64,000 nt of DNA from Macrostomum lignano (lineage: Eukaryota), in NCBI GenBank assembly GCA_002269645.1, contig NIVC01000890.1, positions 1 to 64,000 of the forward strand, given 5' to 3'. The notes under the pieces were generated by a model. That model had not been told where the DNA came from. It did not search any database and saw only the letters and a program-made list of their open reading frames with translations. Below are positions 1 to 28,414 of this stretch, piece after piece. The position numbers and the translations under genes were made by a program. Every line of letters starts with the position of its first letter. The stretch's first letter is position 1.

Positions 1-3000
1 CTTCTTCAACACGCTCTCTCTTGCTCGAATTCTGTCTCTGCATCAATGCGCAGTACACAACTGTTTGAACCTCTGCTGCATTTGTATTAGCTCCAGTCCT
101 TACTTCTGCTGTGCGTTTCGACCTCTGCCTCGCCATCGAACTGAACCGCAGCGTTAGCGTAGTCGGTATCCGGCATGGATGAAGAATCTTTTGTTTCGAC
201 CTTTATAATCGTGTACAGATCATCCACTGCATCCTGTTGAGGCTCATCTGGCTCTGCATGACCTTCAAACTGAACCGAACTGTTTGTGAGAATTCCTTCC
301 GTCTGAACTTCCCTTTCGGTAGAATTTTCCTTTCTTTCTTCGTGCGGTACTTTTGTTTCAAGACGAGCCACAACCAAGGCATTGCACGAATCCTCAGGCT
401 CAAATTGAACGTGTGCTTCAGCTGTGAATACTGACGTCCTCATCTGTGACGTCTTTTTAACCTCCTGATCAGCCGGTCAACCCTAGGAGGTGTACACTCG
501 TGTATGGTTGTTTCAAACGTTTCCTTAACTTCTTCTTCAACGAATTCCGTTTGAGTAGAGACTTCTGGTAATTTTCGTTTTCTTGAGCGTGAGCGAGATC
601 TTCTATCTCTCAGTACTAGAGAGTTCATCTGGACTTGAGCAGATCTCTGTTCAGCTCTGTGACGCACGCTCGTTTCGCTGGATTCGGGTCTTGACTTTCG
701 CGTTAAAGTATCCACTTCATCTGCAATGAACTGCATCGCAGTTGAGGCGCACTCAATCGAAGTTTGGCATTCTTGATCAGTAATCTCTGTACTTTTTTTA
801 GCGGCGCGTAGCTTTCCGGCGTACTTTGGCCGTTGATTTTCATCGAAGTCTTCGAAGTCGTATTCAACAGAAGCATCAGCGCTGTAACACATCGTTTGCG
901 TGTCTACGGAATCACAAAAAGTCTCCGTTTGAACTTCGACCTCCAATGTCTCGATGGCTTCGCTTACAGACAACTTGCGAGGCGTTGAAGAAATCAATGA
1001 GCACTGTATAACCGAGTCTTCAGTTTGAATTGGCTGAGACAGATTGTCGGTTCTAGCAACTACGCTGGCTTCAAGTGTTTCAGTATCTGGCTCTGTATAG
1101 TGAGTGACTGGAAACATGACAGTGTCAACAACTGCTGAATTTCTTACTGTCAGTCTTGTCAGGTTCATCGCTGTCCGATCTGACTTCTGATTTTTCATCA
1201 TCCACTGTTTGTGTTTCACTTCTGGAATGAAGAGCAACTTCAAACACGCACATGCTACTCGTGACAGAAATGGGCCATTGTGTCTTTACAAGCACATCAC
1301 AGACTTCTACTGAGTATTGGCCTGAACTCTCATCCATTTCCTCTTTTGTCTGGTTTCCTTGAGCAACTTTCCTTGACTCTAGCGATTCTAGCGATTCATA
1401 TCGTACCTCAGAAGATTCATATTGGCCATTGCTGTCCTCCATGAATGACTTTGTCTGGCAGAATTTGTTATTAACAACTGGAGCTGCTGTTTCAGCGAGT
1501 TGAGCTTGCACTATTGTAATGACTTCTTCGTCGTCCTTGATTACGTCAGTGGACGCATCGTCTATCTCGATGCAGCAGCTCGTCTGAACAGAAGCAGTTT
1601 CTGTTATCATCAAACAGGCAACTTCGGCCGTTTCAACGTCTGTTCCACTACTCTTAGCCACGTGGACGACTGGCATAATGTCCCACTTGGGACAGTAGGG
1701 CGGCACTTCGGACTCTTCTTCTTGCGCTGACGCTTCAAACTGTTCGGTATTCGTACTGGCGTTCTTGATCTTAGAGAACGGAACGCCTCTCTGAACTCGC
1801 TTTGCTTGGCGCGGGATCTCAATAGGATCGCATGCAGCTTCAGCGCTGTCGACATGCCTAGGAGATGGCTCCGACTGAAAATCGATGCTACACTGAACTT
1901 CGATGTCACAACAGTACTCGATAGTCTGGGTGCCGAAGTCTTCAAATTCATCGGAAAGTCGACGAGGTCCAAACTGTTTTTTAACGTTGCGCGGTGAGTC
2001 ATCGAACTGTTCTTGAGTATCGATGCTACACTGAACTTCGATGTCACAACAGTACTCGAAAGTCTGGGTGCCAAAGTCTTCAAATTCATCAGAAAGTCGA
2101 CGAGGTCCAAACTGTTTTTTAACGTTGCGCGGTGAATCATCGAATTGTTCTTGAGCCAGAACGGCTATTTCGGCGCGGAAGGCAGCTGGACATCCATGCT
2201 GAATGCACTTTCCCTTGAACTCCTTCGTGCTTTCAACTGGTCCTGGCTGCACATCAAACTGGACTTCACTGTCACAGCAGTATTCAATGGTTTGAGTACC
2301 AAAATCTTCAAATTCAGTTGAAAGTCGACGAGCCCCAAATTGTTTCCTTGAAGTTCCGGGCGAATCGTCTGATCTTTCTAGTGCCAGAACACCCGCTTCT
2401 ATTCGGAAGGCAGTTGGGCATCCATGCTGAATGCATTTTCCCTTAAATTCCTTCGTGCTTGTAACTGGTCCTGACTGAACATCAATGCTACACTGAACTT
2501 CCATGTCACAGCAGTATTCAATGGTTTGAGTACCGAAATCTTCAAATTCAGTGGAAAGTCGACGAGCCCCAAATTGTTTCCTCGAAGTTCCGGGTGAATC
2601 TTCGGATTTTTCTTGTGCCAAAATACCCGCCTCGATTCGGAAGGCAGCTGGACATCCATGCTGAATGCGTTTGCACTTGAATTCTTTTGCGGTGGTAGGC
2701 TCTGTGCTCTGCAGCTGCATTTGTACTTCTTCAAAGATTTCTTCCGTTTCCGTATTTGAGCTTGCTTCGCGAGTCATCAACCAAGGGCAGCCTCGCTGGA
2801 TGGCCTTCATCATCACTTGAATGTCGTACTGATTTCCACTGTCGATCATTTCGGTCTTGTCTTGAGTCACTTGGTAGGGCACAGCAGGGCTCTCTAAGCC
2901 AGCAGTGTCGCATCCAACAGCACTCAGCTCTGTGTAGCACTGAACTCCACAGTCAACAAGTGAAGCCTTTGTCTGCGGTTCAGGTGAACTACCAAGGCCC

Positions 3001-6000
3001 TCGTATCGCACTCGACTTCGTATTTCATGCTCCATGGGCAGCCACGCTGAATGGCTTTTCTCGCTATCCCAACATCAAATTGATTTCCACTTTCGACAAG
3101 ATCGCTCCTCTTGACTGGCGTAGTGAACGGCGGGTCCATGTCTGCGCTGCACTCAACTTCGTGTAGCATTGAAAACGGACAACCCTTTTGTATTACCTTG
3201 CCAATTGTTCCAGGGGCAAAAATGTACTCGTACTGTCTTGAGTAGCAGCCTTGTAGGCAACCAATATCTCTCCAGAGTCCTTTTCAACCTGAACGATAGT
3301 GGGCTGCGTGAGTTCGACTTGAATTCCGAGTTCTTCTATTTCCTGGAAGGACTGCGTTGCTGCATTGCTGCATTGAGGCACAGAAGCAGATTGAACTGGC
3401 ACAGTTACTTCAATTTGAGTTGGCTCAAACAATTCTACTTGGACTCCCCACTCTTGAACTTCTTGAAACGCTTGAGTTGTTGCATCGCGCTTGCGTACCG
3501 GGGCGAACTCGAACTTTGGCGCCTGGACTGCAGCCACAATTTCTGTATCCGGATCAGTTTCAGTTCCTACGTCGGAGTGCATGGCAAACGGACATCCATG
3601 CTGAATAGCTTTTCGGTGAAGATCTGCTTTTATGCTTGCCTTCACCATTGCATCTGAGTACTCGGCAGTTTTTAAAGTCTCCGGGAGCACATACTGATCG
3701 TAGGATCCATATTCGACGTAGTCCTCAGTCTCGAAATTCTCTGTGTTTGAAGCAACGTTGCGAACGGCGAACGATGGACAGCCTCGTTGAATTGCTTTTG
3801 ATTTCCAGGTGATTTCTGGAGTGCCGACGTTTTCATCGAGCTTGCTAACAACCAATGGTACGGGAATTTCGATTGTTTCCGCCTTTAGCGGTTCGGTATT
3901 GCAGTCGCCATCAACCATCATGAAGTAGGGGCAACCGTGCTGAATCACCTTATGCTTAGATTCTGATTTAAATGTTGTCTCTCTGTCCAGCATCAAGGAT
4001 CGGTGCGATTGAGTTGCGATGCTGACTTTTTCAGTAAGTGGCGCAGATTCTACAAAGCGAATTTGAACTGGCACCTCTTCATCTTCGGTATTAGTACCTG
4101 TTTCAACCAATCTGAAGAAAGAGCAGCCATACTGCGACACTTTATTGTCAAGGTTTGCATCGAACGTCGTCGAAATATCTTTCATCCGTACGCCAAATTC
4201 CATTTTCGTTTCTGCGAATTCTTTTTCTGGCCCAGTAGTCGGAGATGTCACAACCGGTTCATAGAGACGAGCTTGAATTCCAACGCTTTCATATTGAGAT
4301 TGTTGATACTGAGTACCTACATCGGCCAGTTCAGGTCGAGGTGTAGACTCTACATGGCGCACCTGAACTTCTACTTCCTCGACTTGATCTGTATTACAGT
4401 AGTTTTCGACTCGGTTCGAAAATGGCGAGCCCAACTGAATAACTTTGTGCACATGAGTGACATCAAAGCCGGTTGATAGTTCTTGCATTTCTACTCTGGC
4501 TTTTACCTCAGAATCGTACATCTCCTTCTCAGCGGGTTTGGTCGTGTCCACCTTGACTATTGCATCCTCACGAGCAACACCAAAGCCGGTTGATAGTTCT
4601 TGCATTTCTACTCTGGCTTTTACCTCAGAATCGGACACCTTCTTCTCGACAGGTGTGGTCGTGTCCACCTTGATGATTGTATCCTCATGAGCAACACCAA
4701 AGCCAGTTGATAGTTCTTGCATTTCTACTCTGGCTTTTACCTCAGATTCGGACACCTCCTTCTCAACGGGTTTGGTCGTGTCCACCTTGATGATCGCATC
4801 CTCACGAGCAACACCAAAGCCGGTTGATAGCTCTTGCATTTCTACCCTGGCTTTTACCTCAGAGTCGGACACCTCCTTCTTAACAGGTTTGGTCGTGTCC
4901 ACTTTGATGATCGCATCCTCACGAGCAACACCAAAGCCGGTTGATAGTTCTTGCATTTCTACTCTGGCTTTTACCTCAGAATCGGACACCTTCTTCTCGA
5001 CAGGTGTGGTCGTGTCCACCTTGATGATTGTATCCTCATGAGCAACACCAAAGCCAGTTGATAGCTCTTGCATTTCTACTCTGGCTTTTACCTCAGATTC
5101 GGATACCTCCTTCTCGACAGGTTTGGTCGTGTCCACCTTGATGATTGTATCCTCATGAGCAACACCAAAGCCAGTTGATAGCTCTTGCATTTCTACTCTG
5201 GCTTTTACCTCAGATTCGGATACCTCCTTCTCGACAGGTGTGGTCGTGTCCACCTTGATGATTGTATCCTCATGAGCAACACCAAAGCCAGTTGATAGCT
5301 CTTGCATTTCTACTCTGGCTTTTACCTCAGATTCGGATACCTCCTTCTCGACAGGTGTGGTCGTGTCCACCTTGATGATTGTATCCTCATGAGCAACACC
5401 AAAGCCAGTTGATAGCTCTTGCATTTCTACTCTGGCTTTTACCTCAGAATCGGATACCTCCTTCTCGACAGGTGTGGTCGTGTCCACTTTGATGATCGCA
5501 TCCTGCAAAAATGATTGCGTCTGGACCTCAATGTTTTCTGTGTCGGCTTTTGGCGCTGATTGCAGCTGGACGACCTCCCGGATGACCTCCGGTTCCTCAG
5601 CCGGATCGGTCTGGACAAACATCTCGGCTAGATTGAAAGCCGATGTTCCTTTTTGGATTCGCTTTGCTTTTTGATACGGTTTGACACGCACGTGCTCCTC
5701 TAAGCCTACTCTATTTGCGGCTGCCTCTAGATCTGAGACTTTCTGTGACAGTTGAGCAACAAGGCTCTCGTATGTGTGGCACACAACCTCCAGACTCTGG
5801 TAGTCGTAGTCCAGTGCCACGACACAAGCATCAGCTGTTTCTTTTGGCTGGGTAGCTTTAAAACCTTTTTCTATAGTTTTTGGGCTTTCAGAAGTAAACA
5901 GAACCTGAAGGCTCTTGTCATCGCTAGATTGGTCATATTGCGCGGCTCTGTCAAGCAGAGGGGACCAGTACTGGGTCTGCGATTCAATTATACTAACTTT

Positions 6001-9000
6001 GCCACGACGAGCGCACTCTGGGTACTGGCTTCTAAACAACAGGCTGTCGTCCTGATAAGAAAGGCGTTTGCTGGTTGCAGCCCCGTCGACATGCTCCACT
6101 TGAGTCGTTAAAGCAACACGAACCGATTCCGACTTTAAGTCTTTCTCTACTTCTTTAGCCACGACACTAACCTCGGCACAGTCGGCATAGTACGCCGACA
6201 TGACGTCTCGCTTTTCAGTTTTGCCAGTCTGACAAGCCCTATTTATTCCTTCACGCTGCTGCACGGCCATAACTTGAACAGCTGTCTCCGGCTCGATATC
6301 AGTCTCTTCTTCCGTGTCTTCAATTAGCAGCTGATCGGTCTGTGTTTCGCTCGAACTCCAGATGAACATTGTTTGACAGTCTTGCTCAAATCTGCTAACC
6401 GTTTGGTCAGTTAAGCTGTCTTCATCTGATGACGATTCTTCTGTCTGAATGGCTGAGTCGGAGTAGAAATTCCACGGTACTCCGAGCTGTACTCGCTTTG
6501 AAATCAGCTGTGGCGCGGCCTGTGAGCTGAAGTCTTCTCCTCGGGCGTGGTAATGCAAGCTGGATTCGTTCAGCTCGGGATCAAACTGGCTTGATAAATC
6601 GGATTGCACAGTTGTCTTCACTTTCATTTGGCTCTCCTGAGCGTTCGGCTTCACTATAACATTAATATCGGTCTGCGTGCTTCTAGCAATATCCGCCTCA
6701 TCCATTGAGCGTTCAGTTTGAAAGCCTGACTCGATTAAACTTTCACTTTCGCTGTCCATAGCCACAGTTTGAACGCTGTTATTTAAAGAAGCACTTGGCG
6801 CAAAGCCGCAGGCGGACTCCTTCATGGTCGGAGCAGAGTGCGTCTGGCATTGGAAATCTATCATTTCAGCCCTCGGTTTCTCAAACTGGGTCTCCAAGCC
6901 AACCTGCACATGGCCAGTGGCTTCGAATCTCTCTGTCTGAATACCGAAGGTGCTGGAGCTAGCATTGAAAAATTGGGCATCGGTGTCTTGCATGGCCGAA
7001 ACAACTTGCGTGCTTTTGTTCACTTGCTCAGTCGGTTCCATTTTTAGAGGTGCTTGCTCCACCTGCACAATTGTTTCGACTTCTTCCTCAGTTTGGCTAA
7101 ACGCATTGTGCGATGACGCCAGGAGGACGTAGTGAGTACTGACATCCCTCATTTTCGTTGTACTCACGCTCTGAGCTGAAGCTATTGCGGAAACAGTTTG
7201 TGAGGAAACGTCCGACTTTTCGTCGAATACCCGAGCTACAATTCTGCTATCCGAACTCTCCAGCGCCGCTTCGGCCTCCGACGAAGAGGCAACAACACCG
7301 GGAACAAGAGTGGCAGAGTTTGCTGTCTTGAGGTAGTACTGCCCGCTGGAATCAACCATGACCCGAGAACCGGCCAAGGCACTGGCTGTTTTACCGAGCG
7401 GCTGAACGCGAGCGCTCTTATCTTGAGCATCAACTGTCTGGCTGAACACCGCCACAGACTCCCCAGTGGCAATATCTGTTGATAAACCTTTGTCTGATGC
7501 ATACAGCAAGAACTCGCTCTGGACGTCCCGCAGGGGTCCACGAGTCGATCGTGTTTTTGAGGTACTACTTTCAACAACAGTCTGCGATGTAACGTCGCGT
7601 GTTTCTGTTACCACCTTGGCTATTATACTCTTTTCGGAACTCGACAGATGGCTTTGAGCTTCGGTCTCGGAGACGACTTGACCACGAACCATCATTCCAG
7701 TATCGGCACTGGCTAAGTAGTACTGTCCGGCACTGTCGCACATTAACTTGGATTGAGCAAAGGTGCTTTCAGCTAGTCTTGTTTTTGTTTGCGTGGCAAA
7801 GTCCTCTGAGGTCTTTACTGCATGTACATCCGCTGTAATGCTCTTATTAGACGAGTAAAGAGAATACTGCGTGTTCACTTCTGAAAGAGTAGAGCCGCTT
7901 TGTGTGGCAGCTTGCTTAGAGTCAGGGACTTGTGGTTGATGCGTCTGTACTGTAAAGTCTCTAGTATCGCTGCTGACTCTTGCAACAATGCTTCTCTCTG
8001 AAGTAGCCAAGTAGTTCTTAGCGTCGGATTCCGTAACCGGTTTGCCAGAAATGATCACACTACTGTCAGCGCTGGACAAGTAGTATTGGCCTGAGCTGTC
8101 TCGCATCAGCTTCGGCTGGTATTGGCTGCCTGCGTCGGCATAGTCACCATCAACTTGCACCGAAAAATCTTCGCTGCTACTAGCTAGCATGGACAAGTCT
8201 TTAGTTGCGGAGTACAACTCGTACTGCTGCCGTTCTGCAACGATTTCCTCTTCCGTGGCAACAGTTTGGGTAGTGAAATCTCGAGCATTGCCGACGATTC
8301 TCGCCACAATGCTTTTCTCCGATGTGCTGAGGTGATGCCGCGCCTCAGACTCAGTCACAACTTTTCCTAGAACTCTGACGGCAGAATCCTGACTCGTCAA
8401 GTAGTACTGACCTGCACTGTCTCGCAGGAGACTTGGCTTTGACGCAGCACTGTGAACGCTGACCATTTTGGTCTGCGTGGCGAAATCCTCAGAAGATTTA
8501 ACAAATTCAGCTGTTTGGCTCTTGCTAGATGAGAATAGATCATACTGTGCGTGTACGTCTGTGAGTTCATTTGTGCCGCTCTGCGTTCCACTCTCCTTTT
8601 TAACGGGGCGAGCGAGAGACGCTGTTTGAGTCGAGAAATCTTTTCCTTCATCTGAAACTCGAGCAACTATGTTCTCAGAAGTAGCTAGGTAGTACTGCGC
8701 CTCAGCCTCCGTCAGTGACTGGCCCTGCACCGCCACGCCTGCAGTGGAGCTCACCAGATAGAACTGCCCAGAGCTGTCCTTCATTAGTTTGGCCTGCGAC
8801 ACTGCCGCATCAGAGTAATCTAAATTGGCTTGGGTGCCAAACTCTTCCGAGCTTCTTACGTCCGCAGTTGCTAGCGACTTGTTAGACGAATAAAGGACGT
8901 ACTGCTGCTCGCTGGAAATCAACTCGCGTCTGCTGTCTTCCTGAGCAGTTTGAGACGTGACGTCTCTGAATTTACTAATCACTCGAGCTACAATGTTGTT

Positions 9001-12000: not shown

Positions 12001-15000
12001 CCTCAGCTGCGGAGTCATGAGTGCGGTCAGGTCCTTTTCAGATTTGAATAGGATGTACTGCGCTTGCCCATCCTGAGTTGTGCTCGACGTTTGCAGACTG
12101 GCGTCTCTGACAGTCGGTGCCAAATTAGTACTCATGTACTTATCAGACTGCTGAGATATATACTGTGCCTGGTGTTCTTGAGTTGTGCTAGACGCTTGCA
12201 GGCTGGCGTCTCTGACAGCCGGTGCCAAATTAGTACTCATGTACTTATCAGACTGCTGAGATATATACTGTGCCTGGTGTTCTTGAGTTGTGCTAGACGC
12301 TTGCAGGCTGGCGTCTCTAACTGTCGGAGTCAGTAGTGTCGACAAATCCTTGTCTGAATGGAACAGTACGTACTGAACTTGACTTTCTGTAGTGGATCGG
12401 CTGGCCTGTTGACTGGCATCTTTCACCGGGCTAAGCAATGTATTCAAGTCTTTGTCCGACTGGAACAAGAGGTACTGCGCGTGGCCTTCTCTGGTTTGGG
12501 TTGATGCTTGGAGACTGGCGTCTCGAGTGTCGCTCGTTGTTAGCGCCGATAGGTCTTTGTCCGATTGGAATAGCACATACTGCGCCTGACTCTCGGTAGT
12601 GACTCTAGAAGCTTGCTGGCTAGCGTCTCTCAATTTTGGACTCATCAAGGCCGTCAGGTCTTTGTCTGACTGGAACACCAAGTACTGAGTCTGACCCTCT
12701 GTCATCGTCCGAGAGACTTGCATGCCGGCGTCTCGCATTTTTGGCTCTAACATGACCGACAGGTCTTTGTCCGACTTGAACAAAACGTACTGCGTATGAC
12801 CCTCCGTGGTCAGAGCCGACGCCTGAGTGCTAGAGTCGGTAACAGCCGTCGAGTCTTTGTTCGACTGAAATATGACGAACTGCGTGTCGGTGTCGCGCGA
12901 GCGGATCTGCAAACCTGCTTGGCAGCTTCTGTCTCTGAGGATGAGCCTCTGCTGCAGTTCAGCTCGGAGCTCCTCCGTATCCAGGTGCTTCAGCCAATTG
13001 ACGCTGTCCGTAGCATCTACCGGCTGACTCACCGCCCGCACCTTTTCCTCCGTCTGCCAGTCTTCGTCCAAGTCGATTTCGACAATTCTTGGTCCAGAGA
13101 ACTCCAAAGCGGTGTCCTTGAGCGCCCAAGACGTTTGGATGGCGTGGTCGATTTGGCTCAGGCTTTGCTCCTCCGTCGCGACTTGAAAGAACGCGCTGGC
13201 CTCTCCGGAGTCCGGCATCGTCTGGATGGCGTGCTCTCGACCTTCGACTTGGCTGTACTGACTGCCCGATTTGGTGGCTGGCAGCCGTGTGCTCAGCATT
13301 AGCGTGTCGCTGGTAGAGTACCGAGTCTGGACGCCGTGGTCCGCCCGCTCGCTGTCGAACTGACTACCCGAGTGCTCCGTGACCAGGCGCTGAGATACCG
13401 CCGAACTCAACAAGCCACCGCCGACTCCCACGGTCTGAATTCCGTGCTCCATAGCTGAGGGTTGCTGCGCTGTAACGCTCGAGTCGGCCGTGGCGAAGCC
13501 AGTCTGAATTCCGTGATGCTGCTGGCTGGCCGCGATTCGCGTTTGGATGCCGTGCTCCGCCCGGCGGCCGACGCTGCGCTCCGTCGTCTGCAACGCCGCC
13601 TCGCGAGTGCCGGCCTGAGTAGTTTGCAGACCGCGCGAGTGCTGCTGCAGCCACTGGCGACCGACGACGTTGTCGGCGACACTTTCGCGGGCGGAGGACG
13701 AGGCTACCGAAGACAGCTCGCTCCAGCGGGCCTCGTCGACGCCCGCCTGTCGTAGGCCGGCAGCGGCGGCTTCGTTGAACTCGGACTGACGGGCACGCTG
13801 CGACGGCAGCTGGAACTGCAAAAGCCCCGCGACAGTGTCGCCGCCGGTAGCCGCATGAGCGGACATCAGCACCTCCTGGCGGCGCAGCTTGCGCACGTGG
13901 CGGCGCTGTTCGGCAGCCTGGCCAGCTCGCCAAGCGTTCAGTTTGGCGAAGAGCGACTCCAGTTGCTCCTGGCCGCTGGCTTGGAGAGTCCTGCGGAATA
14001 GCGATTGCATTGCTGGCTAGATGGGTTAGTACCGACTGTCTGGTGATGTATTATGCATCTTTGATGGCTGTTGACTGACGATTGATAGCTCATTGGTTGA
14101 TGATGATAACTTATTGATTGATTGATGATTGCTTGATTGGTTTGTTGATTGATTGATGATTGATTAGTGATTGATTGATGATTTCTTGATTGATTTATTG
14201 ATTGATTTTTTATTGATGATTGATTGGTGATTGATTGATGATTTCTTGATTTATTTATTGATTGATTTTTTATTGATGATTGATTGACGATAGATTGATG
14301 ATTGATTTTTGATTGATTGATGTTTTATTCGTGATTGATTGATGATTGATTGGTGATTGATTGATGATTTCTTCATTGATTTGTTGATCGATGATTGATA
14401 ATCGATTTTTTACTTATGATTGATTGATGATTTGTTGATTTATGATTGATTGACAATAATTGATGATTGATACCGAGATATATGTAATTGCAAATCACAT
14501 GAGAGCTGACTATTTGTAAATACAAACTGCTGCTCTACACCATCCAAAACTATGCTCAATACTCACTCTAGCAGAGCGATGGAGTTGTGCAGCTCAGGCT
14601 TGGAGCAGTCCAGCTCAGTCAGCCAGTACTCGGAGCCGCGCACGGCCAGAGACTGCCGCCGGAACGACTCCCAGTACTTGATGTGCGACTCCAGCTTGGC
14701 CAGCAGGCTCCTCAGCTGCACAATTTCAGCCTCTTTGAGCAGCACTCGCTTCCTCGAGCCGCGTTTCGACGGGTCGTTGCGTCGGTCCAACTGAGCGAGG
14801 GTCTGCAGCACCGAACGGAACCGATCGTCGTCTCCAAAGATATTGTACACCTCCTGCTTGAGCAGCTGCCACTGCTCGGGGCTCTCAAATTCGGCGTAGT
14901 CGTGAGCGGACAGGTGGCGGAAGAGCAGGGTGAGGTAATCGCACAGCACCGTCTGGAACCGGGCCGCTGAGCTGCCCCAGAGAGACAGGAATTTCTCCTC

Positions 15001-18000
15001 CAGCCTGCGGAATGACAAATCATCACGTTTGAGACAGGGGAATTCTTTTTTTCGAGATCGGGGAATCCCTTTAGAACAAGATAAAATAAAACAAATTTGA
15101 ACTGGGAATCTCAGTTGGAATGGGGAAATCCTGTTTATTATGGGAATTTGGGTTGGAATGAAAGAATAAGATGCCTAAATTTGGTATTAGGGAATCCGTG
15201 TCAATAATGGGGAAATTCGAGTCGATACGGGAGAATTCAAGTTAAAGAGGGAATCGAGTTCAATATTTGGAAAATTCAATTTAATAAATGGGGAATCCAA
15301 CTCAGTACTTGGGGAATTCAAGCAATTGATGAGGAAATCCAATATAATAAAGGGAGAAGCCAATTTATTAATTGAGAATCCAATTTATTAATTGGGGAAT
15401 CCGATTCAATAATTGGGGAATCCGGTTCAATAATTAGGGAATCCGGTTCAATAATCGGAGAATCCGATTCAATAATCGGGGAATCCGATTCAATAATTGG
15501 GGAATCCGATTCAATAATCGGGGAATCCGATTCAATAATTGGGGAATCCGATTCAATAATTGGGGAATCCGATTCAATAATTGGGTAATCCGATTCAATA
15601 ATTGGGGAATCCTATTCAATAATCGGGGAATCCGATTCAATAATTGGGGAATCCGATTCAATAATTGGGGAATCCGATTCAATAATTGGGGAATCCGATT
15701 TATTAACTGGGGAATCCGATTCAATAATTGGGTAATCCGATTCAATAATTGGGGAATCCTATTCAATAATCGGGGAATCCGATCCAATAATTGGGGAATC
15801 CGATTCAATAATTGGGGAATCCTATTCAATAATTGGGGAATCCTATTCAATAATTGAGGAATCCGGTTCAATAACTGGGGAATCCTTATTTTCTTTCAGA
15901 GAAGAGGGTGAATTTCTTTTAGAACTGGGAAGAATTTTTATAGGGAGAATACTCTACTCACTTCAGCGCCAGCTCGGTCGCGCCGAGATCAGGCGGAGGC
16001 AGCCACAGCATGATCGAAGGCACGTCGAAGCTGGCTGCCTCGCCATCCTCAGACTCGTAGGAGACCCGCCAGAGCAGACTGTCCGAGTTGTCAAGCAGGG
16101 TGAGCTCGGTGCCCTCCTCGAATCGGCCGATCGAGTTTTCGAATGGGCACAGCAGCAGGGCCGGCCGGGGCTGTCGGGTGGGTTCGAGTCTCTGCTGCAC
16201 CTGGGTGTAGGGATGATGAATGGTTTTATGGACTATGTGGATTGCTAATCTAGCCAATCGCATTGATAAAGGAATAGAATGGATTGCTAATCTAGCCAAT
16301 CATATTGATAAAGGAATAGAATGGATTGCTAATCTAGCCAATCATATTGATAAAGGAATAGAATGGATTGCTAATCTAGCCCCAACTCACTGGCACAACC
16401 CGCCGGCTAGCAGACACCACAGTCTGCACCCGCTGCCAGAGGCACAGGAACTCCGACAGCTGGCTCTGCATGAAGGTCTTGATGGAGTCGGTTTCTCGCA
16501 CAATCGGCTTGGGCGAGAAGGCGCTGAGCCAGTGCTCTAGCTGGTGCCAGCGGTCTTTCAGCAGCAGAAAGGTGTCCCTGTAGTCGAAGAAGAACTGATG
16601 ATAGTCTGAGGCGTTTCTGGTGTGCACGCGGGTCAGGTCGGTGAGCCGCTGCACCTGTGACCAGCAGTCGGTCACGCCCTGGCTTGTCACCTTGTCACCG
16701 TGCGGATGGTCACGCATGGCCTTGGCGCGGGCCATAACAGTGTGCATCAGTTTCTGGAGGGATAAGGGTAGCGTTCAGTAGAAGTGTAGTACAGTAGAGT
16801 AGATCTGAGTAGAGTAGAGTAGGGTAGATCTGAGTATAGTAGAGTAGAGTAGATCTGAGTAGAGTAGAGTAGATTTGAGTAGAGTAGAGCAGATCTGAGT
16901 AGAGTAGAGTATATCTGAGTAGAGTAGAGTAGATCTGAGTAGAGTAGAGTAGATCTGAGTAGAGTAGAGTAGAGTAGATCTGAGTAGAGTAGAGTAGAGT
17001 AGATCTGAATAGAGTAGAGTAGATCTGAGTAGAGTAGAGTAGATCTGAGTAGAGTAGAGTAGATCTGAGTAGAGTAGAGTAGAGTAGATCTGAGTAGAGT
17101 AGAGTAGATCTGAGTAGAGTAGAGTAGATCTGAGTAGAGTAGAGTAGATCTGAGTCGAGTAGAGTAGAGTAGATCTGAGTAGAGTAGAGTAGATCTGAGT
17201 AGAGTAGAGTAGATCTGAGTAGAGTAGAGTAGATCTGAGTAGAGTAGAGTAGATCTGAGTAGAGTAGAGTAGATCTGAGTAGAGTAGAGTAGAGTAGATC
17301 TGAGTAGAGTAGAGTAGAGTAGATCTGAATAGAGTAGAGTAGATCTGAGTAGAGTAGAGTAGATCTGAGTAGAGTAGAGTAGATCTGAGTAGAGTAGAGT
17401 AGAGTAGATCTGAGTAGAGTAGAGTAGATCTGAGTAGAGTAGAGTAGATCTGAGTAGAGTAGAGTAGATCTGAGTCGAGTAGAGTAGATCTGAGTAGAGT
17501 AGAGTAGAGTAGATCTGAGTAGAGTAGAGTATATCTGAGTAGAGTAGAGTAGATCTGAGTAGAGTAGAGTAGATCTGAGTAGAGTAGAGTAGGGTAGATC
17601 TGAGTATAGTAGAGTAGAGTAGATCTGAGTAGAGTAGAGTAGAGTAGATCTGAGTAGAGTAGAGCAGATCTGAGTAGAGTAGAGTATATCTGAGTAGAGT
17701 AGAGTAGATCTGAGTAGAGTAGAGTAGATCTGAGTAGAGTAGAGTAGAGTAGATCTGAGTAGAGTAGAGTAGATCTGAATAGAGTAGAGTAGATCTGAGT
17801 AGAGTAGAGTAGATCTGAGTAGAGTAGAGTAGAGTAGATCTGAGTAGAGTAGAGTAGATCTGAGTAGAGTAGAGTAGAGTGGATCTGAGTAGAGTAGAGT
17901 ATATCTGAGTAGAGTAGATCTGAGTAGAGTAGAGTAGAGTAGATCTGAGTAGAGTAGATCTGAGTAGAGCAGAGTAGATCTGAGTAGAGTAGATCTGAGT

Positions 18001-19113
18001 AGAGTAGATCTGAGTAGAGCAGAGTAGATCTGAGTAGAGCAGAGTAGATCTGAGTAGAGTAGATCTGAGTAGAGTAGATCTGAGTAGAAAAGATCTCTGA
18101 GTCGGATGGAACAGAGCAGAGTAGAATATATCAGAGCACTAGTAACAGCCATCATTACCGTGAAGTCGTCCTCCAGTCCTGCAATCCGCTGCAGATAACC
18201 AACGCACTTCTTGTTCTGGTGAATCTCGCCTTTGATGCTCTCGCTCTCCTTCAGCAGGCGGGCCTCGGTGTCGCCCTGTTGGGGTTGCGAAGGGGAGGGG
18301 TTCAATGTTGAACATCAGCTAGCCATCGGCAGCTCAAGTACCATGAAGCACTGAAAGTTCAATGGACGATTCTCACCCGGACTCCATCGCAGATCTGCTT
18401 CTCTATATCGAAGAGGCGAGTCTCCAAATCTTTTTGAAGCTCGCCAGCCTCGCCCAGAAACAAATTGTTGTCCCCGAATCGAACTCTGGTCGCTTCGTCC
18501 TGCGAGCGGTGTTCGGGTTTATGTGGGTCTTTGTTAGATATAATCTTAGGAGAATTATTTCAGTTGTTCGAGTGTAACAGGTAACAGTTCAAGTCTAACA
18601 GGTAACAGTTCGAGTCTAACAGGTAACAGTTCGAGTCTAACAGGTAACAGTTCGAGTCTAACAGGTAACAGTTCGAGTCTAACAGGTAACAGTTTGAGTC
18701 TAACAGGTAACAGTTCGAGTCTAACAGGTAACAGTTCAAGTCTAACAGATAAAACACCAGTCTAACATGTAAAACCTACCCCAGTCTAACAGGTAAACAC
18801 CTGTATAACAGGTAAAACCCCCAGTCTAACAGGTAAAACACCAGTCTAACAGGTAAAACACAGAGGTCTAACACGTAAAACCCACCCCAATCTAACAGGA
18901 AAAACCCCAGTCTAACAGGTAAAACCCGATTCTAACAGGTAAAACACCAGTATAACAGGTAAAACCCCAGTCTAACAGGTTAGAATTTAAACAAATTCAA
19001 CTCCAATGTTAACAGAGAAATTCTCAAGAGTCAAGTATTATAACAAAATATCATGGACTCACCTTGATAGCTCGAAGAGCATCTTCAAGCTGCACCTCCA
19101 CCTCTGTCCCCAT
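1..19113 (-). CDS. Giant plakin-domain (spectrin-like + SH3) protein with a very long repeat-rich, TQT-motif-rich tail; 3' end beyond the window
   Basis: Phase-consistent GT-AG exons: 19113-19063 (MGTEVEVQLEDALRAIK), 18544-18377, 18275-18159, 16753-16391, 16200-15962, 15004-14567, then one exon from 13990 to <1. HTRNASDYHQFFFD...RVQTVVSASRRVVPVQQR...LLCPF...LTLLDNSDSLLWRV...VPSIMLWLPPPD matches from memory the desmoplakin/plectin plakin-domain SH3 region (HLKENAAYFQFFEE...ALCDY...ILKDNNERSKWYV...VPSVGLIIPPPN). The ORF is open 13990-3193 and continues with the same motifs in shifted frames (3169-2924, 3035-1125, 1243-440, 443-87). Confidence 0.85.
4455..5508 (-). repeat. Coding tandem repeat, 117 bp / 39 aa x9 (IIKVDTTTPVEKEVSESEVKARVEMQELSTGFGVAHEDT)
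   Basis: The DNA period of 117 is visible (agcaacacc at 5041, 5158, 5275, 5392); nine copies counted in the translation. Confidence 0.95.
7290..11230 (-). repeat. Coding repeat region: 12 diverged units of about 100-135 aa, each containing (L/M)(R/K)DSSGQ(Y/F)(Y/F)L...S(S/E)KNIVARV
   Basis: Twelve DS(S/A/Q)GQ-like motifs counted in the 3605-aa ORF, spaced about 305-410 nt apart. Confidence 0.9.
11480..12900 (-). repeat. Coding repeat region of about 33-36 aa units (xQYxLFxSDKDLS...RDASxQAS)
   Basis: Recurrent SDKD(L/V) motif about every 100-105 nt; a near-identical pair at 12121/12226 (period 105). Confidence 0.9.
14075..14470. repeat. Degenerate GATT-rich simple repeat (intron)
   Basis: Runs of gattgattgatgatt between exons 14567 and 13990. 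Confidence 0.9.
15360..15885. repeat. 21-bp minisatellite (aataattggggaatccgattc), intronic
   Basis: About 24 near-identical units, with degenerate copies continuing towards 15050. Confidence 0.95.
16238..16380. repeat. 42-bp tandem repeat x about 3.5 (atggattgctaatctagccaatcatattgataaaggaataga), intronic
   Basis: Read directly; fills most of intron 16201-16390. Confidence 0.9.
16785..18090. repeat. Compound AGAGT / AGATCTGAGT satellite, intronic
   Basis: Fills intron 16754-18158. Confidence 0.97.
18575..18985. repeat. 19-21 bp minisatellites with a TCTAACAGGTAA core, intronic
   Basis: tctaacaggtaacagttcgag x about 8, followed by tctaacaggtaaaacccca-type units. Confidence 0.9.
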
Positions 19114-27400: not shown

Positions 27401-28414
27401 CTTTACTAACAGTGAAAGTGACACAATAAGTTAATCGAACAAACCTATCGTAAGCCTCCGAGAGACAGCCTGTCTGTCCCGAACCTCCCCGCTCATCCAA
27501 CAAGCGAAGAGTTTTGGCAGCCCCGTCTGTCATGGCCAAAGGACAGCCGTACAATCCGCTCGATGGTGCGTACAACAGATTCTTCAACATCTGATGAAGC
27601 CGTCCGTTGCTAACGACTCCGCCGCCGTTGCTAGGGCTAGGATAAGCCAGAGCAATGAAACCTTCCTCGGCTGAGAAAGTTTTCATCGATTTCCAAGCGT
27701 GCGAAGTGTGAATCCGATCGATTCTGCGACCCCAGCAGTCGAACTGTTCCAGGGTTGGTGGCTGACGCTCGCAGTCGAGCGCCAGTTCGTGTACATCCGT
27801 TGCTATGCGGTTGCCGAGGCGACTGAGATCCAATTGGATCGCTGCAAGCTCTGCTGGCTGTGTTTATTGACAAAATGTTTTTAAGAACAACTTTTGATGA
27901 CCTATTTTATATGAAATAAACTATGAGTGGTCATGGACACTCTATTGAGAATTTCTCTCTCTGACATTGCTGATCAAGCCTCCACAGTAGGCAAGCCTCA
28001 ACTGCTGGACATTCTCAGCTAGTGCCTAGCTTAGTCTCCCAAGCTTTCTATGGTATCCCAATGGTAATAATTAAATAAATAGCAAAATCAGTACAGGGAC
28101 CACTAGTAAACTAAAGGAAAGATAATAATTTAGGCATACTAGCTATGTAAAAAATTGATGCTTTGTTGTTACAAGTATATAACCATTTTGATAACTTGCT
28201 GTTTTTTAGAAAAAAAATGATATAATTAGCTTACCTTATTACCAAAGGCCACTTTAACATATCTCTGCATAAATGGATCCTTGTCAAAGGGATTGGTGAC
28301 TGGCACTGATTGTTGATAAAAGGAGCCATGCTTGGCACCCTGAAAAACTGCTTCATTGTGAGCAAATTGCTTAATCAAATGAGAAAATCTTGATATTTCT
28401 CTTGCTTGAAGCAT
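24435..28414 (-). CDS. Acyl-CoA dehydrogenase, AidB / ACDH-11-like clade, about 635 aa
   Basis: Exons 28414-28235, 27857-27445, 27293-27168, 26744-26364, 26107-25849, 24983-24435, all phase-consistent. Motifs: GCPLAMTDGAA, WTSGQWMTERGGGSDVG, GFKWFSSATDSDMTLALAR, RLKNKLGTRQLPTAEL, EAMEMFGGVGYVEES, LPIWEGTTNVLSLD. The N-terminal EQFDCWGRRID region resembles AidB. Confidence 0.93.
25105..25800. repeat. Purine-rich (GGAGA)n low-complexity intron fill
   Basis: Lies within intron 24984-25848. Confidence 0.95.
26125..26320. repeat. Short degenerate GAGGAGGGT-type tandem repeat (intron)
   Basis: Lies within intron 26108-26363. Confidence 0.8.

What the first reader, a model, noticed from the sequence alone, without database searches (positions are those of the whole stretch)
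1..19113. Giant plakin-headed protein whose tail is a multivalent array of LC8 (dynein light chain)-type TQT motifs
Seen: about 460 aa of plakin-like helices plus SH3 are spliced onto a single exon of >13.9 kb (>4,600 codons). The exon is rich in S/T/Q/E/D and has at least 15 literal TQT motifs (e.g. DFSTQT, DFATQT, FGTQT x4, SETQT, RSTQT) plus many xQT/GIQV variants (HGIQT x3, GIQVE, GVQVE). Established: TQT and GIQVD are the canonical LC8/DYNLL binding motifs, and multivalent LC8 partners are disordered scaffolds. Classical plakins continue into a coiled-coil or spectrin rod and plakin repeats, and often begin with CH domains; none of these is recognisable in the visible part. Inference: a lineage-specific cytolinker in which a junction-targeting plakin head is followed by an LC8-zippered filament in place of a coiled-coil rod.
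Basis: partly seen in the sequence, partly recalled or inferred. Interest (0 to 1): 0.85.

Follow-up and report, generated by a model that had tools for sequence, protein, structure and literature searches.

The report
Giant flatworm plakin with repeat tail
This is a real but uncharacterised Macrostomum lignano gene for a giant plakin-type cytoskeletal linker whose huge single-exon tail carries many TQT-like motifs; that they bind dynein light chain LC8 is plausible for some of them but unproven.

Summary
The gene is real and lies on the minus strand. Seven GT-AG exons (19113 down to 3193) give 4,042 aa, identical to GenBank PAA75311.1 (Macrostomum lignano, "hypothetical protein"). The 443-aa head is a plakin domain: Pfam SH3_10, and desmoplakin and plectin as best sequence and fold matches.

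The ">13.9 kb exon" is open for only 10.8 kb in this window. The stop at 3193-3195 and the frame changes below it come from private 1-2 base indels in the last 3.2 kb of a contig. Two other genomic copies read straight through, so the true exon is at least 16.1 kb and its 3' end lies outside the window.

The TQT count holds: 18 in the window, and 11 versus 2.5 expected in the annotated protein. About 12 sites resemble known LC8 binders, and in the one repeat module modelled the TQT motifs lie in low-confidence (probably flexible) linkers. However, the best-conserved tail motifs are not LC8-type, the -1 anchor residue varies, and sites lie about 85 aa apart.

The family is found across flatworms and is unstudied. 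The Schistosoma relative is enriched in tegument-lineage cells together with dynein light chains. Verdict: a new plakin variant; LC8 binding is a testable hypothesis (about 0.25).

The parts
19063..19113 (-). Exon 1 with the start codon (ATG at 19113-19111); 17 codons
   Evidence: Donor AAG|gtgagt. The model equals PAA75311.1.
18377..18499 (-). Exon 2, helical (first spectrin-like repeat)
   Evidence: Borders cag|GAC ... CGG|gtgaga. Modelled as helices with pLDDT above 84.
18159..18275 (-). Exon 3, helical
   Evidence: GT-AG borders; AF2 model.
16391..16753 (-). Exon 4, the spectrin-like repeat before the SH3. It aligns to SR4 of desmoplakin and plectin.
   Evidence: phmmer against 3r6n E=1.3e-13 and 3pe0 E=4e-7.
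15962..16200 (-). Exon 5, plakin-type SH3 domain (aa 218-286, roughly 15997-16200)
   Evidence: Pfam SH3_10 E=1.3e-10, 41.6 bits against a cut-off of 22.8. Beta strands at residues 230-279 in the model.
14567..15004 (-). Exon 6, the spectrin-like repeat(s) after the SH3
   Evidence: GT-AG borders. Foldseek against 3r6n E=2e-14 over 460 columns.
3193..13990 (-). Giant exon 7, the part that is open in this window (3,599 codons plus TAA at 3193-3195). The stop is probably an artefact.
   Evidence: ORF scan. dN/dS between copies is 0.23-0.28. All indels between copies that do not shift the frame are multiples of 3.
1..3192 (-). Continuation of exon 7 to the contig end. The same repeat families continue (KxIQxGCP, EFEDFGTQT x4) but in shifting frames.
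   Evidence: Private 1-2 base indels at about 3217, 3004, 1145, 1131, 477, 115, 50 and 18. L002 and L003 agree with each other and read through.
13117..13569 (-). Tail region B (aa 585-735): six H[GA][IV]QT motifs spaced 13-36 aa apart. This is the only stretch with the spacing typical of LC8 clients.
   Evidence: Positions 592, 605, 628, 664, 699 and 728. Matrix scores are low, 4.6-6.3 bits.
11422..12939 (-). Tail region C (aa about 795-1300): about 15 tandem units of about 35 aa, 'RDASLQAS...QAQYVLFQSDKDLS'
   Evidence: Motif list; TRF 105-bp periods.
7024..11235 (-). Tail region D (aa 1363-2766): 12 modules of 101-138 aa. Each has a 45-aa mini-domain (LMRDSSGQYYL..G..VTESEA..HL.SSEKNIVARV) followed by a linker carrying DF[ST]xQT, TQYxLYSSNKS and SSEDF[AS]TQT.
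   Evidence: Alignment A1. In the AF2 model residues 1-45 have pLDDT about 80 (three strands and a helix) and the rest is below 50.
5500..7023 (-). Tail region E (aa 2767-3274): irregular and acidic, with many xQT[DE] motifs. It holds two of the three best LC8-like sites (SSSETQTD, IARSTQTD).
   Evidence: Matrix scores 18.1 and 15.9 bits.
4426..5499 (-). Tail region F (aa 3275-3632): nine near-identical 39-aa (117-bp) repeats. Copy number differs between the genomic copies.
   Evidence: TRF 4452-5504, period 117, 9 copies, 94% identity. 117-nt indels between copies.
3196..4425 (-). Tail region G (aa 3633-4042, continuing below 3196): modules built around K[AVR][IV]Q[HRKL]G[CS]P. The same motif occurs in tapeworm and fluke relatives.
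   Evidence: Regex census.

Best explanation
Window 1-19113 (minus strand) holds the 5' 19 kb of a real, expressed-type gene of the flatworm Macrostomum lignano (BOX15_Mlig005848g1). It encodes a giant cytolinker of the plakin family, and belongs to a paralog-rich family found so far only in Platyhelminthes.

Shown:
- The 443-aa head is a plakin domain: spectrin-like three-helix repeats with an embedded SH3. It has no CH or actin-binding domain.
- One giant exon encodes the rest: 13,990 nt in the window and at least 16.1 kb in another genomic copy.
- That exon is a chain of at least five tandem-repeat families.
- One family consists of 12 modules of about 115 aa. Each has a 45-aa mini-domain (three strands and a helix) followed by a linker that the one modelled module shows at low confidence, so it is probably flexible. 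The linker carries conserved glutamine-centred motifs.
- The tail is under purifying selection.
- The annotated stop codon is a contig-end sequencing artefact.

Inferred:
- The head targets the protein to junctional or adhesion complexes of the epidermis. The epidermis is the free-living counterpart of the parasite tegument, where the Schistosoma relative is enriched.
- The tail acts as a very long multivalent spacer or scaffold that replaces the coiled-coil rod of desmoplakin-type plakins.
- By analogy with the parasite relatives, a C-terminal plakin-repeat domain may lie beyond the contig end.
- A subset of the Q-T motifs (about 10-25 sites) may recruit LC8-type dynein light chains and so pair two tails. 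LC8 binding does not appear to be the organising principle of the whole tail.
For: Gene model and identity:
- Seven GT-AG exons; the translation equals PAA75311.1.
- Plakin head: SH3_10; desmoplakin 3r6n and plectin 3pe0 by sequence and by fold (AF2 pLDDT 79, Foldseek E=2e-14 and 4e-7).
- The helix at residues 433-489 and the homology to relatives (query positions up to 474-485) span the exon 6/7 junction.

Coding constraint on the tail:
- dN/dS is 0.23-0.28 between three genomic copies.
- Indels that do not shift the frame are all multiples of 3, including whole 105- and 117-nt units. In the part that is open in the window, every frame-shifting indel is a private 1-base deletion in a short base run; the contig-end indels are private 1-2 base changes, several of them also in short runs.

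Family:
- 91 hits among 1.84 billion representative proteins. The 20 looked up are all flatworm proteins and none has a characterised function.
- Long members share the architecture. The fluke and tapeworm ones add a C-terminal plakin-repeat-like domain.

Expression:
- Smp_073450 is in the definitive-tegument cluster 5, 13-31-fold enriched in TSP-2+ cells. Dynein light chains are among the most enriched genes in the same cells (PMC5927768 Suppl. 2).

Module anatomy.

LC8-like subset:
- 12 sites at or above the lower quartile of binder scores, against 1.0 in shuffles.
- DFSTQT resembles the Bassoon binder AEFSTQTP, and SDVSSQTV resembles the KIBRA binder LDVSSQTD.
Against: - There is no direct expression, localisation or interaction data for the Macrostomum gene. 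No paper in the held library mentions it or its Schistosoma relative by name.
- The 3' end was not reached, so the C-terminal domain is unknown.
- Orthology to Smp_073450 is not one-to-one: the heads are 27-29% identical and Macrostomum has several paralogs.
- The mini-domain has no significant structural or sequence match. Similarity to plakin repeats is not supported (hhalign probability 0.18).
- A charge-hydropathy plot is borderline, so 'disordered' rests only on low pLDDT from a 12-row alignment of internal repeats.
- Each of the three copies carries frameshifts. Decay of some copies cannot be formally excluded.
Confidence: 0.7

Rival explanations
1. The tail is primarily a disordered, multivalent array of LC8/DYNLL-binding TQT-type motifs. 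LC8 dimers zip two tails into a ladder or filament that functionally replaces the coiled-coil rod of classical plakins.
For: - TQT 11 against 2.5 expected, and [TVI]Q[TV] 35 against 11.5, in the tail.
- 12 sites at or above 11.4 bits on a matrix built from 79 published binders, against 1.0 in shuffles. Schistosoma relative: 30 against 1.3, with hexamers identical to ATMIN and RSP3 binders (TETQTM, TSTQTD).
- D at -4 and a small residue at -2, as in known binders (PMC6607443).
- The motifs sit in stretches with pLDDT below 50.
- Region B has six IQT/VQT anchors 13-36 aa apart.
- The LC8 domain PF01221 is expanded in flatworms and abundant in the tegument (PMC3510090, PMC10302083).
- Dynein light chains are co-enriched with Smp_073450 in TSP-2+ cells.
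- KANK1-L2 shows that LC8 can turn a disordered linker into a rod even with weak motifs (PMC12803091).
Against: - In the 12 homologous modules the buried -1 anchor is T in 4, S in 3, and G, V or Q in the others. D(-4), Q and T(+1) are what is conserved.
- The homologous motif in the 35-aa repeats is RDASLQAS or SQQAS, which is not an LC8 anchor.
- The commonest partner of Q in the tail is Y (41 QY, 5.4-fold). KxIQ[HRK]G has a charged +1 residue, which is disfavoured.
- Density is 3.4 sites per 1,000 aa. ATMIN has 10 in 428 aa and KANK1 at least 15 in 220-300 aa. Median spacing here is about 85 aa, so a rigid rod is not expected.
- Tapeworm relatives have only 3-5 sites.
- My matrix separates binders from TQT-containing non-binders only modestly: the non-binder upper quartile is 12.5 bits.
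- Many peptides containing TQT do not bind LC8 (PMC6607443).
Confidence: 0.25
2. The glutamine-centred motifs serve another partner or chemistry. Examples are docking of intermediate filaments or microtubules, or transglutaminase cross-linking of Q and K residues as in the envelope plakins and involucrin. On this view the TQT instances are by-products of a more general [TCMILV]-Q-[TVISA]-[G/D/E] repeat grammar.
For: - Across the family the enriched context is -1 T/C/M/I/L/V, +1 T/V/I/S/A and +2 G/D/E. That is broader than the LC8 anchor.
- Motif classes shared between flatworm classes are K[RK][IT]QxGx[PS] and GKKLQV, both pairing K with Q.
- The best-conserved tail elements are the mini-domain and [TA]QYxL[FY]xS[DN]K.
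- Established background: periplakin, envoplakin and desmoplakin are transglutaminase substrates (my own knowledge, not tested here).
Against: - No positive evidence for any particular alternative partner.
- No transglutaminase, intermediate-filament or microtubule-binding signature was detected in Pfam.
- This is purely an inference from motif grammar.
Confidence: 0.15
3. The locus is a decaying duplicate (a pseudogene copy) or an annotation chimera, so the long reading frame has no present function.
For: - This copy has a premature stop and eight frame-disturbing indels. The other two copies each carry one to three private frameshifts.
- The tail matches no Pfam family.
Against: - The indels cluster in the last 3.2 kb of a contig.
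- In the part that is open in the window, all frame-shifting differences are single-base homopolymer deletions private to one copy. All other indels are multiples of 3.
- dN/dS is 0.23-0.28 over about 3,500 codons.
- The exon is 98.6-98.9% identical between copies, against 90-93% for the intron-containing 5' part.
- Relatives with the same architecture exist in flukes and tapeworms. One is supported by a cDNA-derived entry (Q5DAE5) and by RNA-seq.
Confidence: 0.05

Closest known systems
Desmoplakin, BPAG1e and plectin (classical plakins)
   Same: - N-terminal plakin domain with a non-canonical SH3 embedded between spectrin repeats; these are the best sequence and fold matches (3r6n, 3pe0).
- Head-spacer-(tail) logic.
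- No CH domain, as in desmoplakin.
- Parasite relatives end in a plakin-repeat-like domain.
   Different: - The head is only about 16-30% identical.
- The central coiled-coil rod is absent. It is replaced by more than 3,600 residues of S/T/Q/V/E-rich tandem repeats from one exon.
- No plakin repeat is detectable in the visible part.
- The family is confined to Platyhelminthes.
Spectraplakins (MACF1, Shot, VAB-10), including their giant plakin-repeat exon isoforms
   Same: A plakin domain and a giant exon encoding a repeat region. Some database entries for relatives are auto-named 'microtubule actin cross linking factor 1'.
   Different: No CH domains, no spectrin rod, and no EF-hand or GAR domain in the window or in the complete parasite relatives. 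The auto-name is not supported by domain content.
ATMIN/ASCIZ, Nup159 and KANK1-L2 (multivalent LC8 clients)
   Same: Repeated TQT-type anchors in low-confidence or disordered sequence. D at -4 and a small residue at -2 in many copies. Shares the concept of LC8 pairing and stiffening a long linker.
   Different: - Known clients pack 5-15 sites with linkers of about 10-40 aa.
- Here the candidate sites are about 85 aa apart (23-370), except in region B.
- The anchors are not conserved across homologous repeats.
- Binding is untested.
AHNAK (giant single-exon repeat scaffold)
   Same: A small N-terminal domain from short exons joined to one giant exon that encodes dozens of modules of about 115-128 aa. 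A cortical scaffold role is plausible.
   Different: No sequence homology. AHNAK has a PDZ head, not a plakin head, and different repeat chemistry.

Membership tests
Plakin family (plakin domain) | Plakin-type SH3 (Pfam SH3_10) embedded in the helical repeats | tested here: met
   SH3_10 E=1.3e-10, 41.6 bits against a cut-off of 22.8, aa 218-286. Strands at 230-279 in the AF2 model.
Plakin family (plakin domain) | Flanking spectrin repeats homologous to SR3-SR6 of desmoplakin or plectin | tested here: met
   phmmer 3r6n E=1.3e-13 and 3pe0 E=4.4e-7. Foldseek 3r6n E=2.1e-14 over 460 columns and 3pe0 E=4.4e-7.
Plakin family (full architecture) | C-terminal plakin repeat domain(s) | tested here: inconclusive
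   - No Pfam Plectin hit in 4,042 aa or in the downstream frames.
- The 45-aa mini-domain against the parasite C-terminal profile: hhalign probability 0.18.
- The gene's 3' end lies beyond the contig.
- Relatives: Pfam Plectin at 19.4 bits against a 20.5 cut-off in Smp_073450, and PF00681 precomputed for S. japonicum Q5DAE5.
Plakin family (full architecture) | Coiled-coil or spectrin-repeat rod after the plakin domain | tested here: not met
   - Helices end at about aa 489-525.
- The tail is S/T/Q/V-rich and matches no Pfam family.
- The D-module model has only one 10-residue helix.
- No dedicated coiled-coil predictor was run.
Spectraplakin (MACF1/Shot) | N-terminal CH actin-binding domains, and C-terminal EF-hand and GAR domains | tested here: not met
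   - No CH hit in the head.
- The ATG lies at 19113. The upstream 5 kb holds only minisatellites, then the next gene.
- The three long parasite relatives and the one long Macrostomum paralog that were scanned show only SH3_10, plus a weak Plectin hit in one.
Multivalent LC8/DYNLL client | Several [TVI]Q[TV] anchors with favourable flanks (-4 D/S, -3 K/R, small -2, +2 D/E/P) | tested here: inconclusive
   - 36 anchors in the protein, 35 of them in the tail, against 11.5 expected for the tail.
- 12 sites at or above 11.4 bits and 4 at or above 14.6 bits on a matrix built from Table S4 of PMC6607443.
- The -3 residue is F, not K/R, and +2 varies.
- The matrix overlaps with non-binders.
Multivalent LC8/DYNLL client | Motifs lie in intrinsically disordered sequence | tested here: inconclusive
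   pLDDT is below 50 for the linker carrying DFSTQT, TQYALY and SEDFSTQT. The alignment had only 12 internal repeats, and the charge-hydropathy plot is borderline.
Multivalent LC8/DYNLL client | Short, regular linkers between sites (duplex ladder or rod) | tested here: not met
   Spacing is 23-371 aa with a median of about 85. ATMIN has 10 sites in 428 aa and KANK1 at least 15 in 220-300 aa. Region B (13-36 aa) is the exception.
Multivalent LC8/DYNLL client | Anchor conserved across homologous repeat copies and across relatives | tested here: not met
   - The -1 residue is T in 4 of 10 module copies.
- Region C has LQA or QQA at the homologous place.
- Tapeworm relatives have 3-5 sites against 30 in S. 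mansoni.
Multivalent LC8/DYNLL client | Physical binding to LC8 | not testable with these tools
   Needs pull-down, ITC or SEC-MALS, or AlphaFold-Multimer with the Macrostomum LC8.

The most novel reading that the evidence does not exclude
A phylum-wide family of giant plakins has replaced the coiled-coil rod by a ladder of LC8-type light-chain binding sites. These proteins would be the missing cortical scaffold for the strikingly expanded and abundant dynein-light-chain proteins of the flatworm epidermis and tegument. LC8-driven pairing would set the length and stiffness of a junction-to-cytoskeleton tether.
Probability: 0.25. Interest if true: 0.8.

Novelty: new variant of a known kind. Interest (0 to 1): 0.55.

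Why it matters
Plakins are the textbook linkers between cell junctions and the cytoskeleton, and their dimerising rod is thought to be central to how they work.

Flatworms have a whole family of giant plakin-headed proteins (3,400-6,500 aa) with no rod. In its place is a fast-evolving but selectively constrained repeat tail.

The Schistosoma member is enriched in tegument-lineage cells. The tegument is the host-parasite interface and a drug and vaccine target. Dynein-light-chain-like proteins are notoriously abundant there, and their role is unexplained.

If even part of the tail binds LC8, that would link the two puzzles and add a second natural example, after KANK1, of LC8 building a long structural element. 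If it does not, the conserved QYxLFxSDKDL and KxIQxGCP motifs and the 45-aa mini-domain are new elements that still need partners.

There is also a practical point. The GenBank model is truncated by contig-end indels, and all three copies in assembly GCA_002269645.1 carry such errors.

Tried and rejected
- **Word-indexed protein search.** Queries with the head and with the downstream repeats of L002 returned nothing, although an identical protein is in the collection. The tool was insensitive here, so the exhaustive HMMER search was used instead.
- **Reaching the true 3' end.** L003 ends at a contig end. L002 is still open after 16.1 kb. A profile of the parasite C-terminal domain found no Macrostomum protein. 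Unresolved.
- **Is the 45-aa mini-domain a plakin repeat?** No support from Pfam, the PDB profile search, Foldseek or hhalign against the parasite C-terminal domain. Not supported.
- **Parasite C-terminal profile against the PDB.** Desmoplakin 1lm5 and plectin 2n03 appear only at E of about 0.9. This is a hint, not evidence. The precomputed PF00681 on Q5DAE5 is better.
- **Short introns as the cause of the frame changes.** A GT at 3195 looks like a donor. Rejected, because the 'intron' would remove repeat-homologous codons and the other copies differ only by 1-2 base indels.
- **Charge-hydropathy plot for disorder.** Borderline and uninformative.
- **Repeat-register alignment for region C.** MAFFT aligned the overlapping windows by identity, which made it useless for structure prediction. 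Not pursued.
- **Literature.** No paper in the held library names Smp_073450 or Mlig005848/003549/027648 in its main text, or describes this family.

Full report
**What is in the window**

The feature lies on the minus strand. An ORF scan shows one open stretch at 3196-14016 (3,607 codons) and several short helical or SH3-like stretches between 14.5 and 19.2 kb. Reading the splice sites gives seven exons, all with GT-AG borders:

| Exon | Window coordinates |
|---|---|
| 1 | 19113-19063 |
| 2 | 18499-18377 |
| 3 | 18275-18159 |
| 4 | 16753-16391 |
| 5 | 16200-15962 |
| 6 | 15004-14567 |
| 7 | 13990-3193 |

They join in frame to a 4,042-aa protein. That protein is identical, residue for residue, to GenBank PAA75311.1. 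The entry is BOX15_Mlig005848g1, 'hypothetical protein', from Macrostomum lignano; UniProt auto-names it 'Desmoplakin SH3 domain-containing protein'.

The upstream neighbour on the same strand (24.4-27.9 kb) is an ACAD11/AidB-type acyl-CoA dehydrogenase. It sits next to all three genomic copies of the gene. No CH-domain exon lies between the two genes.

**The head**

- Residues 1-443 come from exons 1-6.
- Pfam finds SH3_10 above its curated threshold: 41.6 bits against 22.8, aa 218-286.
- The only PDB sequence matches are the plakin domains of desmoplakin (3r6n, E=1.3e-13) and plectin (3pe0, E=4.4e-7).
- An AlphaFold2 model built with 17 relatives has pLDDT 79 and pTM 0.66. It shows long helices with an SH3 sandwich at residues 230-279.
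- Foldseek ranks 3r6n (E=2e-14, 460 columns) and 3pe0 first.
- One helix (433-489) runs across the exon 6/7 junction (aa 443/444), and homology to relatives extends to query positions 474-485. Both support the splice that joins the head to the giant exon.

**The giant exon is truncated by sequencing errors**

In this window the exon is open for 10,798 nt and ends at a TAA (3195-3193). Below that, similar coding-like repeats continue to position 1 but change frame at least five times.

Window position 1 is the end of contig NIVC01000890.1 of assembly GCA_002269645.1. Two further copies of the gene were fetched: L002 inside a 635-kb contig, and L003 at another contig end. Both are 98.6-98.9% identical in the exon.

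A three-way alignment gives the following picture:

- Every frame-disturbing difference in the window's last 3.2 kb is private to the window copy. These are 1-2 base deletions at about 3217 (CCCCC to CCCC), 3004, 1145, 1131, 477 and 115, plus small insertions at about 50 and 18.
- L002 and L003 agree with each other there and stay in frame. L003 is open for 2,517 codons across this region.
- L002 and L003 each have their own private single-base homopolymer deletions elsewhere.
- All other indels between the copies are multiples of three (3, 42, 105, 117, 171 and 285 nt), including whole repeat units.
- dN/dS over about 3,500 codons is 0.23-0.28.

The simplest reading is one continuous, selectively constrained exon of at least 16.1 kb (L002 17867 to beyond 33983). 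That implies a protein of about 5,800 aa or more. The annotated stop is a long-read indel artefact, and the true C-terminus was not reached.

**Anatomy of the tail**

Composition: S 13%, A 9%, T 9%, V 9%, Q 8%, E 8%. No Pfam family matches. The tail is a chain of repeat families:

| Region | Residues | Content |
|---|---|---|
| B | 585-735 | Six H[GA][IV]QT motifs, 13-36 aa apart |
| C | 795-1300 | About 15 units of 35 aa, 'RDASLQAS...QAQYVLFQSDKDLS' |
| D | 1363-2766 | Twelve modules of 101-138 aa |
| E | 2767-3274 | Irregular, acidic, many xQT[DE] |
| F | 3275-3632 | Nine near-identical 39-aa repeats |
| G | 3633 to the window edge | Modules around K[AVR][IV]Q[HRK]GCP, then EFEDFGTQT units; further 120-aa repeats in L002 |

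Each D module begins with a well-conserved 45-aa unit, LMRDSSGQYYL.S.DS.V.V.G..VTESEA..HL.SSEKNIVARV. AlphaFold2 models this unit as three strands and a helix at pLDDT of about 80. The rest of the module carries DF[ST]xQT, TQYxLYSSNKS and SSEDF[AS]TQT, and is below pLDDT 50.

The mini-domain has no significant match in the PDB by sequence or by fold, and no detectable relation to plakin repeats.

**The TQT observation**

- Literal TQT occurs 11 times in the annotated protein, against 2.5 +/- 1.5 in shuffles. It occurs 18 times in all coding frames of the window.
- In the tail, [TVI]Q[TV] occurs 35 times against 11.5 expected.
- I built a log-odds matrix from the 79 binders and 32 TQT-containing non-binders of Jespersen et al. 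2019 (PMC6607443, Table S4).
- Twelve tail sites reach the lower quartile of binder scores, against 1.0 in shuffles. Four reach the binder median. The best are SSSETQTD, KDFSTQTD and IARSTQTD.
- DFSTQT resembles the Bassoon binder AEFSTQTP, and SDVSSQTV resembles the KIBRA binder LDVSSQTD.

**Why LC8 is not yet the best account of the whole tail**

1. The enrichment is partly a founder effect of recent duplications.
2. Within the 12 homologous modules the buried -1 anchor residue is T in only 4 of 10 copies (S x3, and G, V, Q). D(-4), Q and T(+1) are what is conserved.
3. The homologous motif of the older 35-aa repeats is RDASLQAS or SQQAS, not an LC8 anchor.
4. The commonest and best-conserved Q motifs are [TA]QYxL[FY]xS[DN]K (41 QY, 5.4-fold enriched) and KxIQ[HRK]GCP. 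The latter has a charged +1 residue, which is disfavoured in LC8 grooves.
5. Site density is 3.4 per 1,000 aa with a median spacing of about 85 aa. ATMIN has 10 sites in 428 aa and KANK1-L2 at least 15 in 220-300 aa, and in those proteins short linkers are what produce a rod. Only region B has comparable spacing, and its motifs score weakly.
6. My matrix separates binders from non-binders only modestly, and many TQT peptides do not bind LC8.

**The family and its biology**

An exhaustive HMMER search of 1.84 billion representative proteins found only 91 hits. The 20 looked up are all from Platyhelminthes: Macrostomum paralogs, Schistosoma, Calicophoron, Dicrocoelium, Sparganum, Dibothriocephalus, Hymenolepis, Taenia, Hydatigera and Echinococcus. 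They are labelled 'hypothetical' or carry automatic names.

- Long members (3,441-6,525 aa) share the SH3_10 head and a Q/T-rich repeat tail.
- The enriched context around Q across the family is -1 T/C/M/I/L/V, +1 T/V/I/S/A and +2 G/D/E.
- K[RK][IT]QxGx[PS] occurs in Macrostomum, Sparganum, Calicophoron and Schistosoma.
- The two fluke relatives and the Sparganum tapeworm relative end in a conserved domain of about 220 aa. It gives a near-threshold Pfam Plectin hit, and PF00681 is precomputed for the cDNA-derived S. japonicum fragment Q5DAE5. These relatives therefore look like desmoplakin with the rod replaced.
- LC8-like matrix hits vary widely across the family: 30 in S. mansoni (including hexamers identical to ATMIN and RSP3 binders), 16 in a Macrostomum paralog, and 3-7 in tapeworms and Calicophoron.

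No paper in the held library names these genes in its main text. However, Supplementary file 2 of Wendt et al. 2018 (PMC5927768) lists Smp_073450:

- log2 fold change is 4.9 against neoblasts and 3.7 against other differentiated cells.
- Two dynein light chains (Smp_040680 and Smp_200180) are among the most enriched transcripts of the same TSP-2+ cells.
- The LC8 domain PF01221 is known to be expanded in flukes and tapeworms and abundant in the tegument (PMC3510090, PMC10302083).

This is circumstantial support for a tegument or epidermis role. It keeps the LC8 idea alive at family level.

**Conclusion**

- Two corrections apply: the ORF is interrupted in this window by contig-end errors, and the gene is incomplete at the window edge.
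- It is best described as a flatworm-specific variant of the plakin family, with a modular repeat tail in place of a rod.
- LC8 recruitment is a reasonable, testable hypothesis for a subset of motifs. It is not shown, and it is not the most conserved feature of the tail.
- Novelty: a new variant of a known kind.
- Interest is moderate to high, because the family is unstudied, spans the phylum, is linked to the tegument, and offers a concrete experiment.

Noticed in passing
window 1-3217; L002 about 23980, 25770 and 26688; L003 about 21611: All three copies of this gene in assembly GCA_002269645.1 carry private single-base homopolymer deletions. These break the reading frame, so the GenBank models are truncated at 4,042, 2,482 and 2,730 aa. 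The window copy has eight indels in the last 3.2 kb of its contig.
   Followed up: yes
window 24438-27863 (-): Exons of an ACAD11/AidB-type acyl-CoA dehydrogenase (AidB_N, Acyl-CoA_dh_M, Acyl-CoA_dh_1, ACDH-11_C). It is the conserved upstream neighbour of all three copies of the plakin gene.
   Followed up: partly
window 30948-33650 (+): A DEG/ENaC (amiloride-sensitive sodium channel, PF00858, E=2e-43) gene. Most of it is in one 499-codon open stretch.
   Followed up: no
window 41321-42043 (-): Fragment of a mariner/Mos1-type transposase (HTH_48 and the start of the DDE domain).
   Followed up: no
window 44601-47048 (+): A single 816-codon open frame that starts with SSSESLSSG repeats and matches DUF1258 (E=8e-14). 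The nature of the gene is unknown.
   Followed up: no
window 54943-56770 (-): Exons for a PTB/hnRNP-L-like RNA-binding protein (RRM_5, RRM_10).
   Followed up: no
window 14113-14471, 15249-15885, 16788-18063, 18566-18980; also 58.1-60.9 kb, 24.4-26.4 kb and 36.7-38.1 kb: - The introns of the plakin gene, and several other intervals, are filled with long minisatellite arrays (periods of 4-21 bp and 85-106 bp).
- These give long spurious open frames in all frames.
- Between copies the intron-containing 5' part is 90-93% identical, against about 99% for the giant exon.
   Followed up: partly
window about 34.7-35.2 kb: A run of 171 N (an assembly gap).
   Followed up: no
P0010 (Smp_073450) aa 560-1150; P0007 aa 640-1130: Fluke and tapeworm relatives carry a bipartite repeat, 'D[AV][IV][TC]Q[IVT]G.[VI]....[ST][TC]Q[TS]', with two Q motifs 9-10 residues apart. 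The window protein lacks it. It may be a hairpin-forming unit or a second class of binding site.
   Followed up: no
P0097 (UniRef A0A1I8I886, 4,429 aa) and P0123 (A0A1I8IQ65): Older Macrostomum gene models fuse plakin-head paralogs to RNase H or RING domains. These are probably chimeric predictions with neighbouring transposon or other genes.
   Followed up: no
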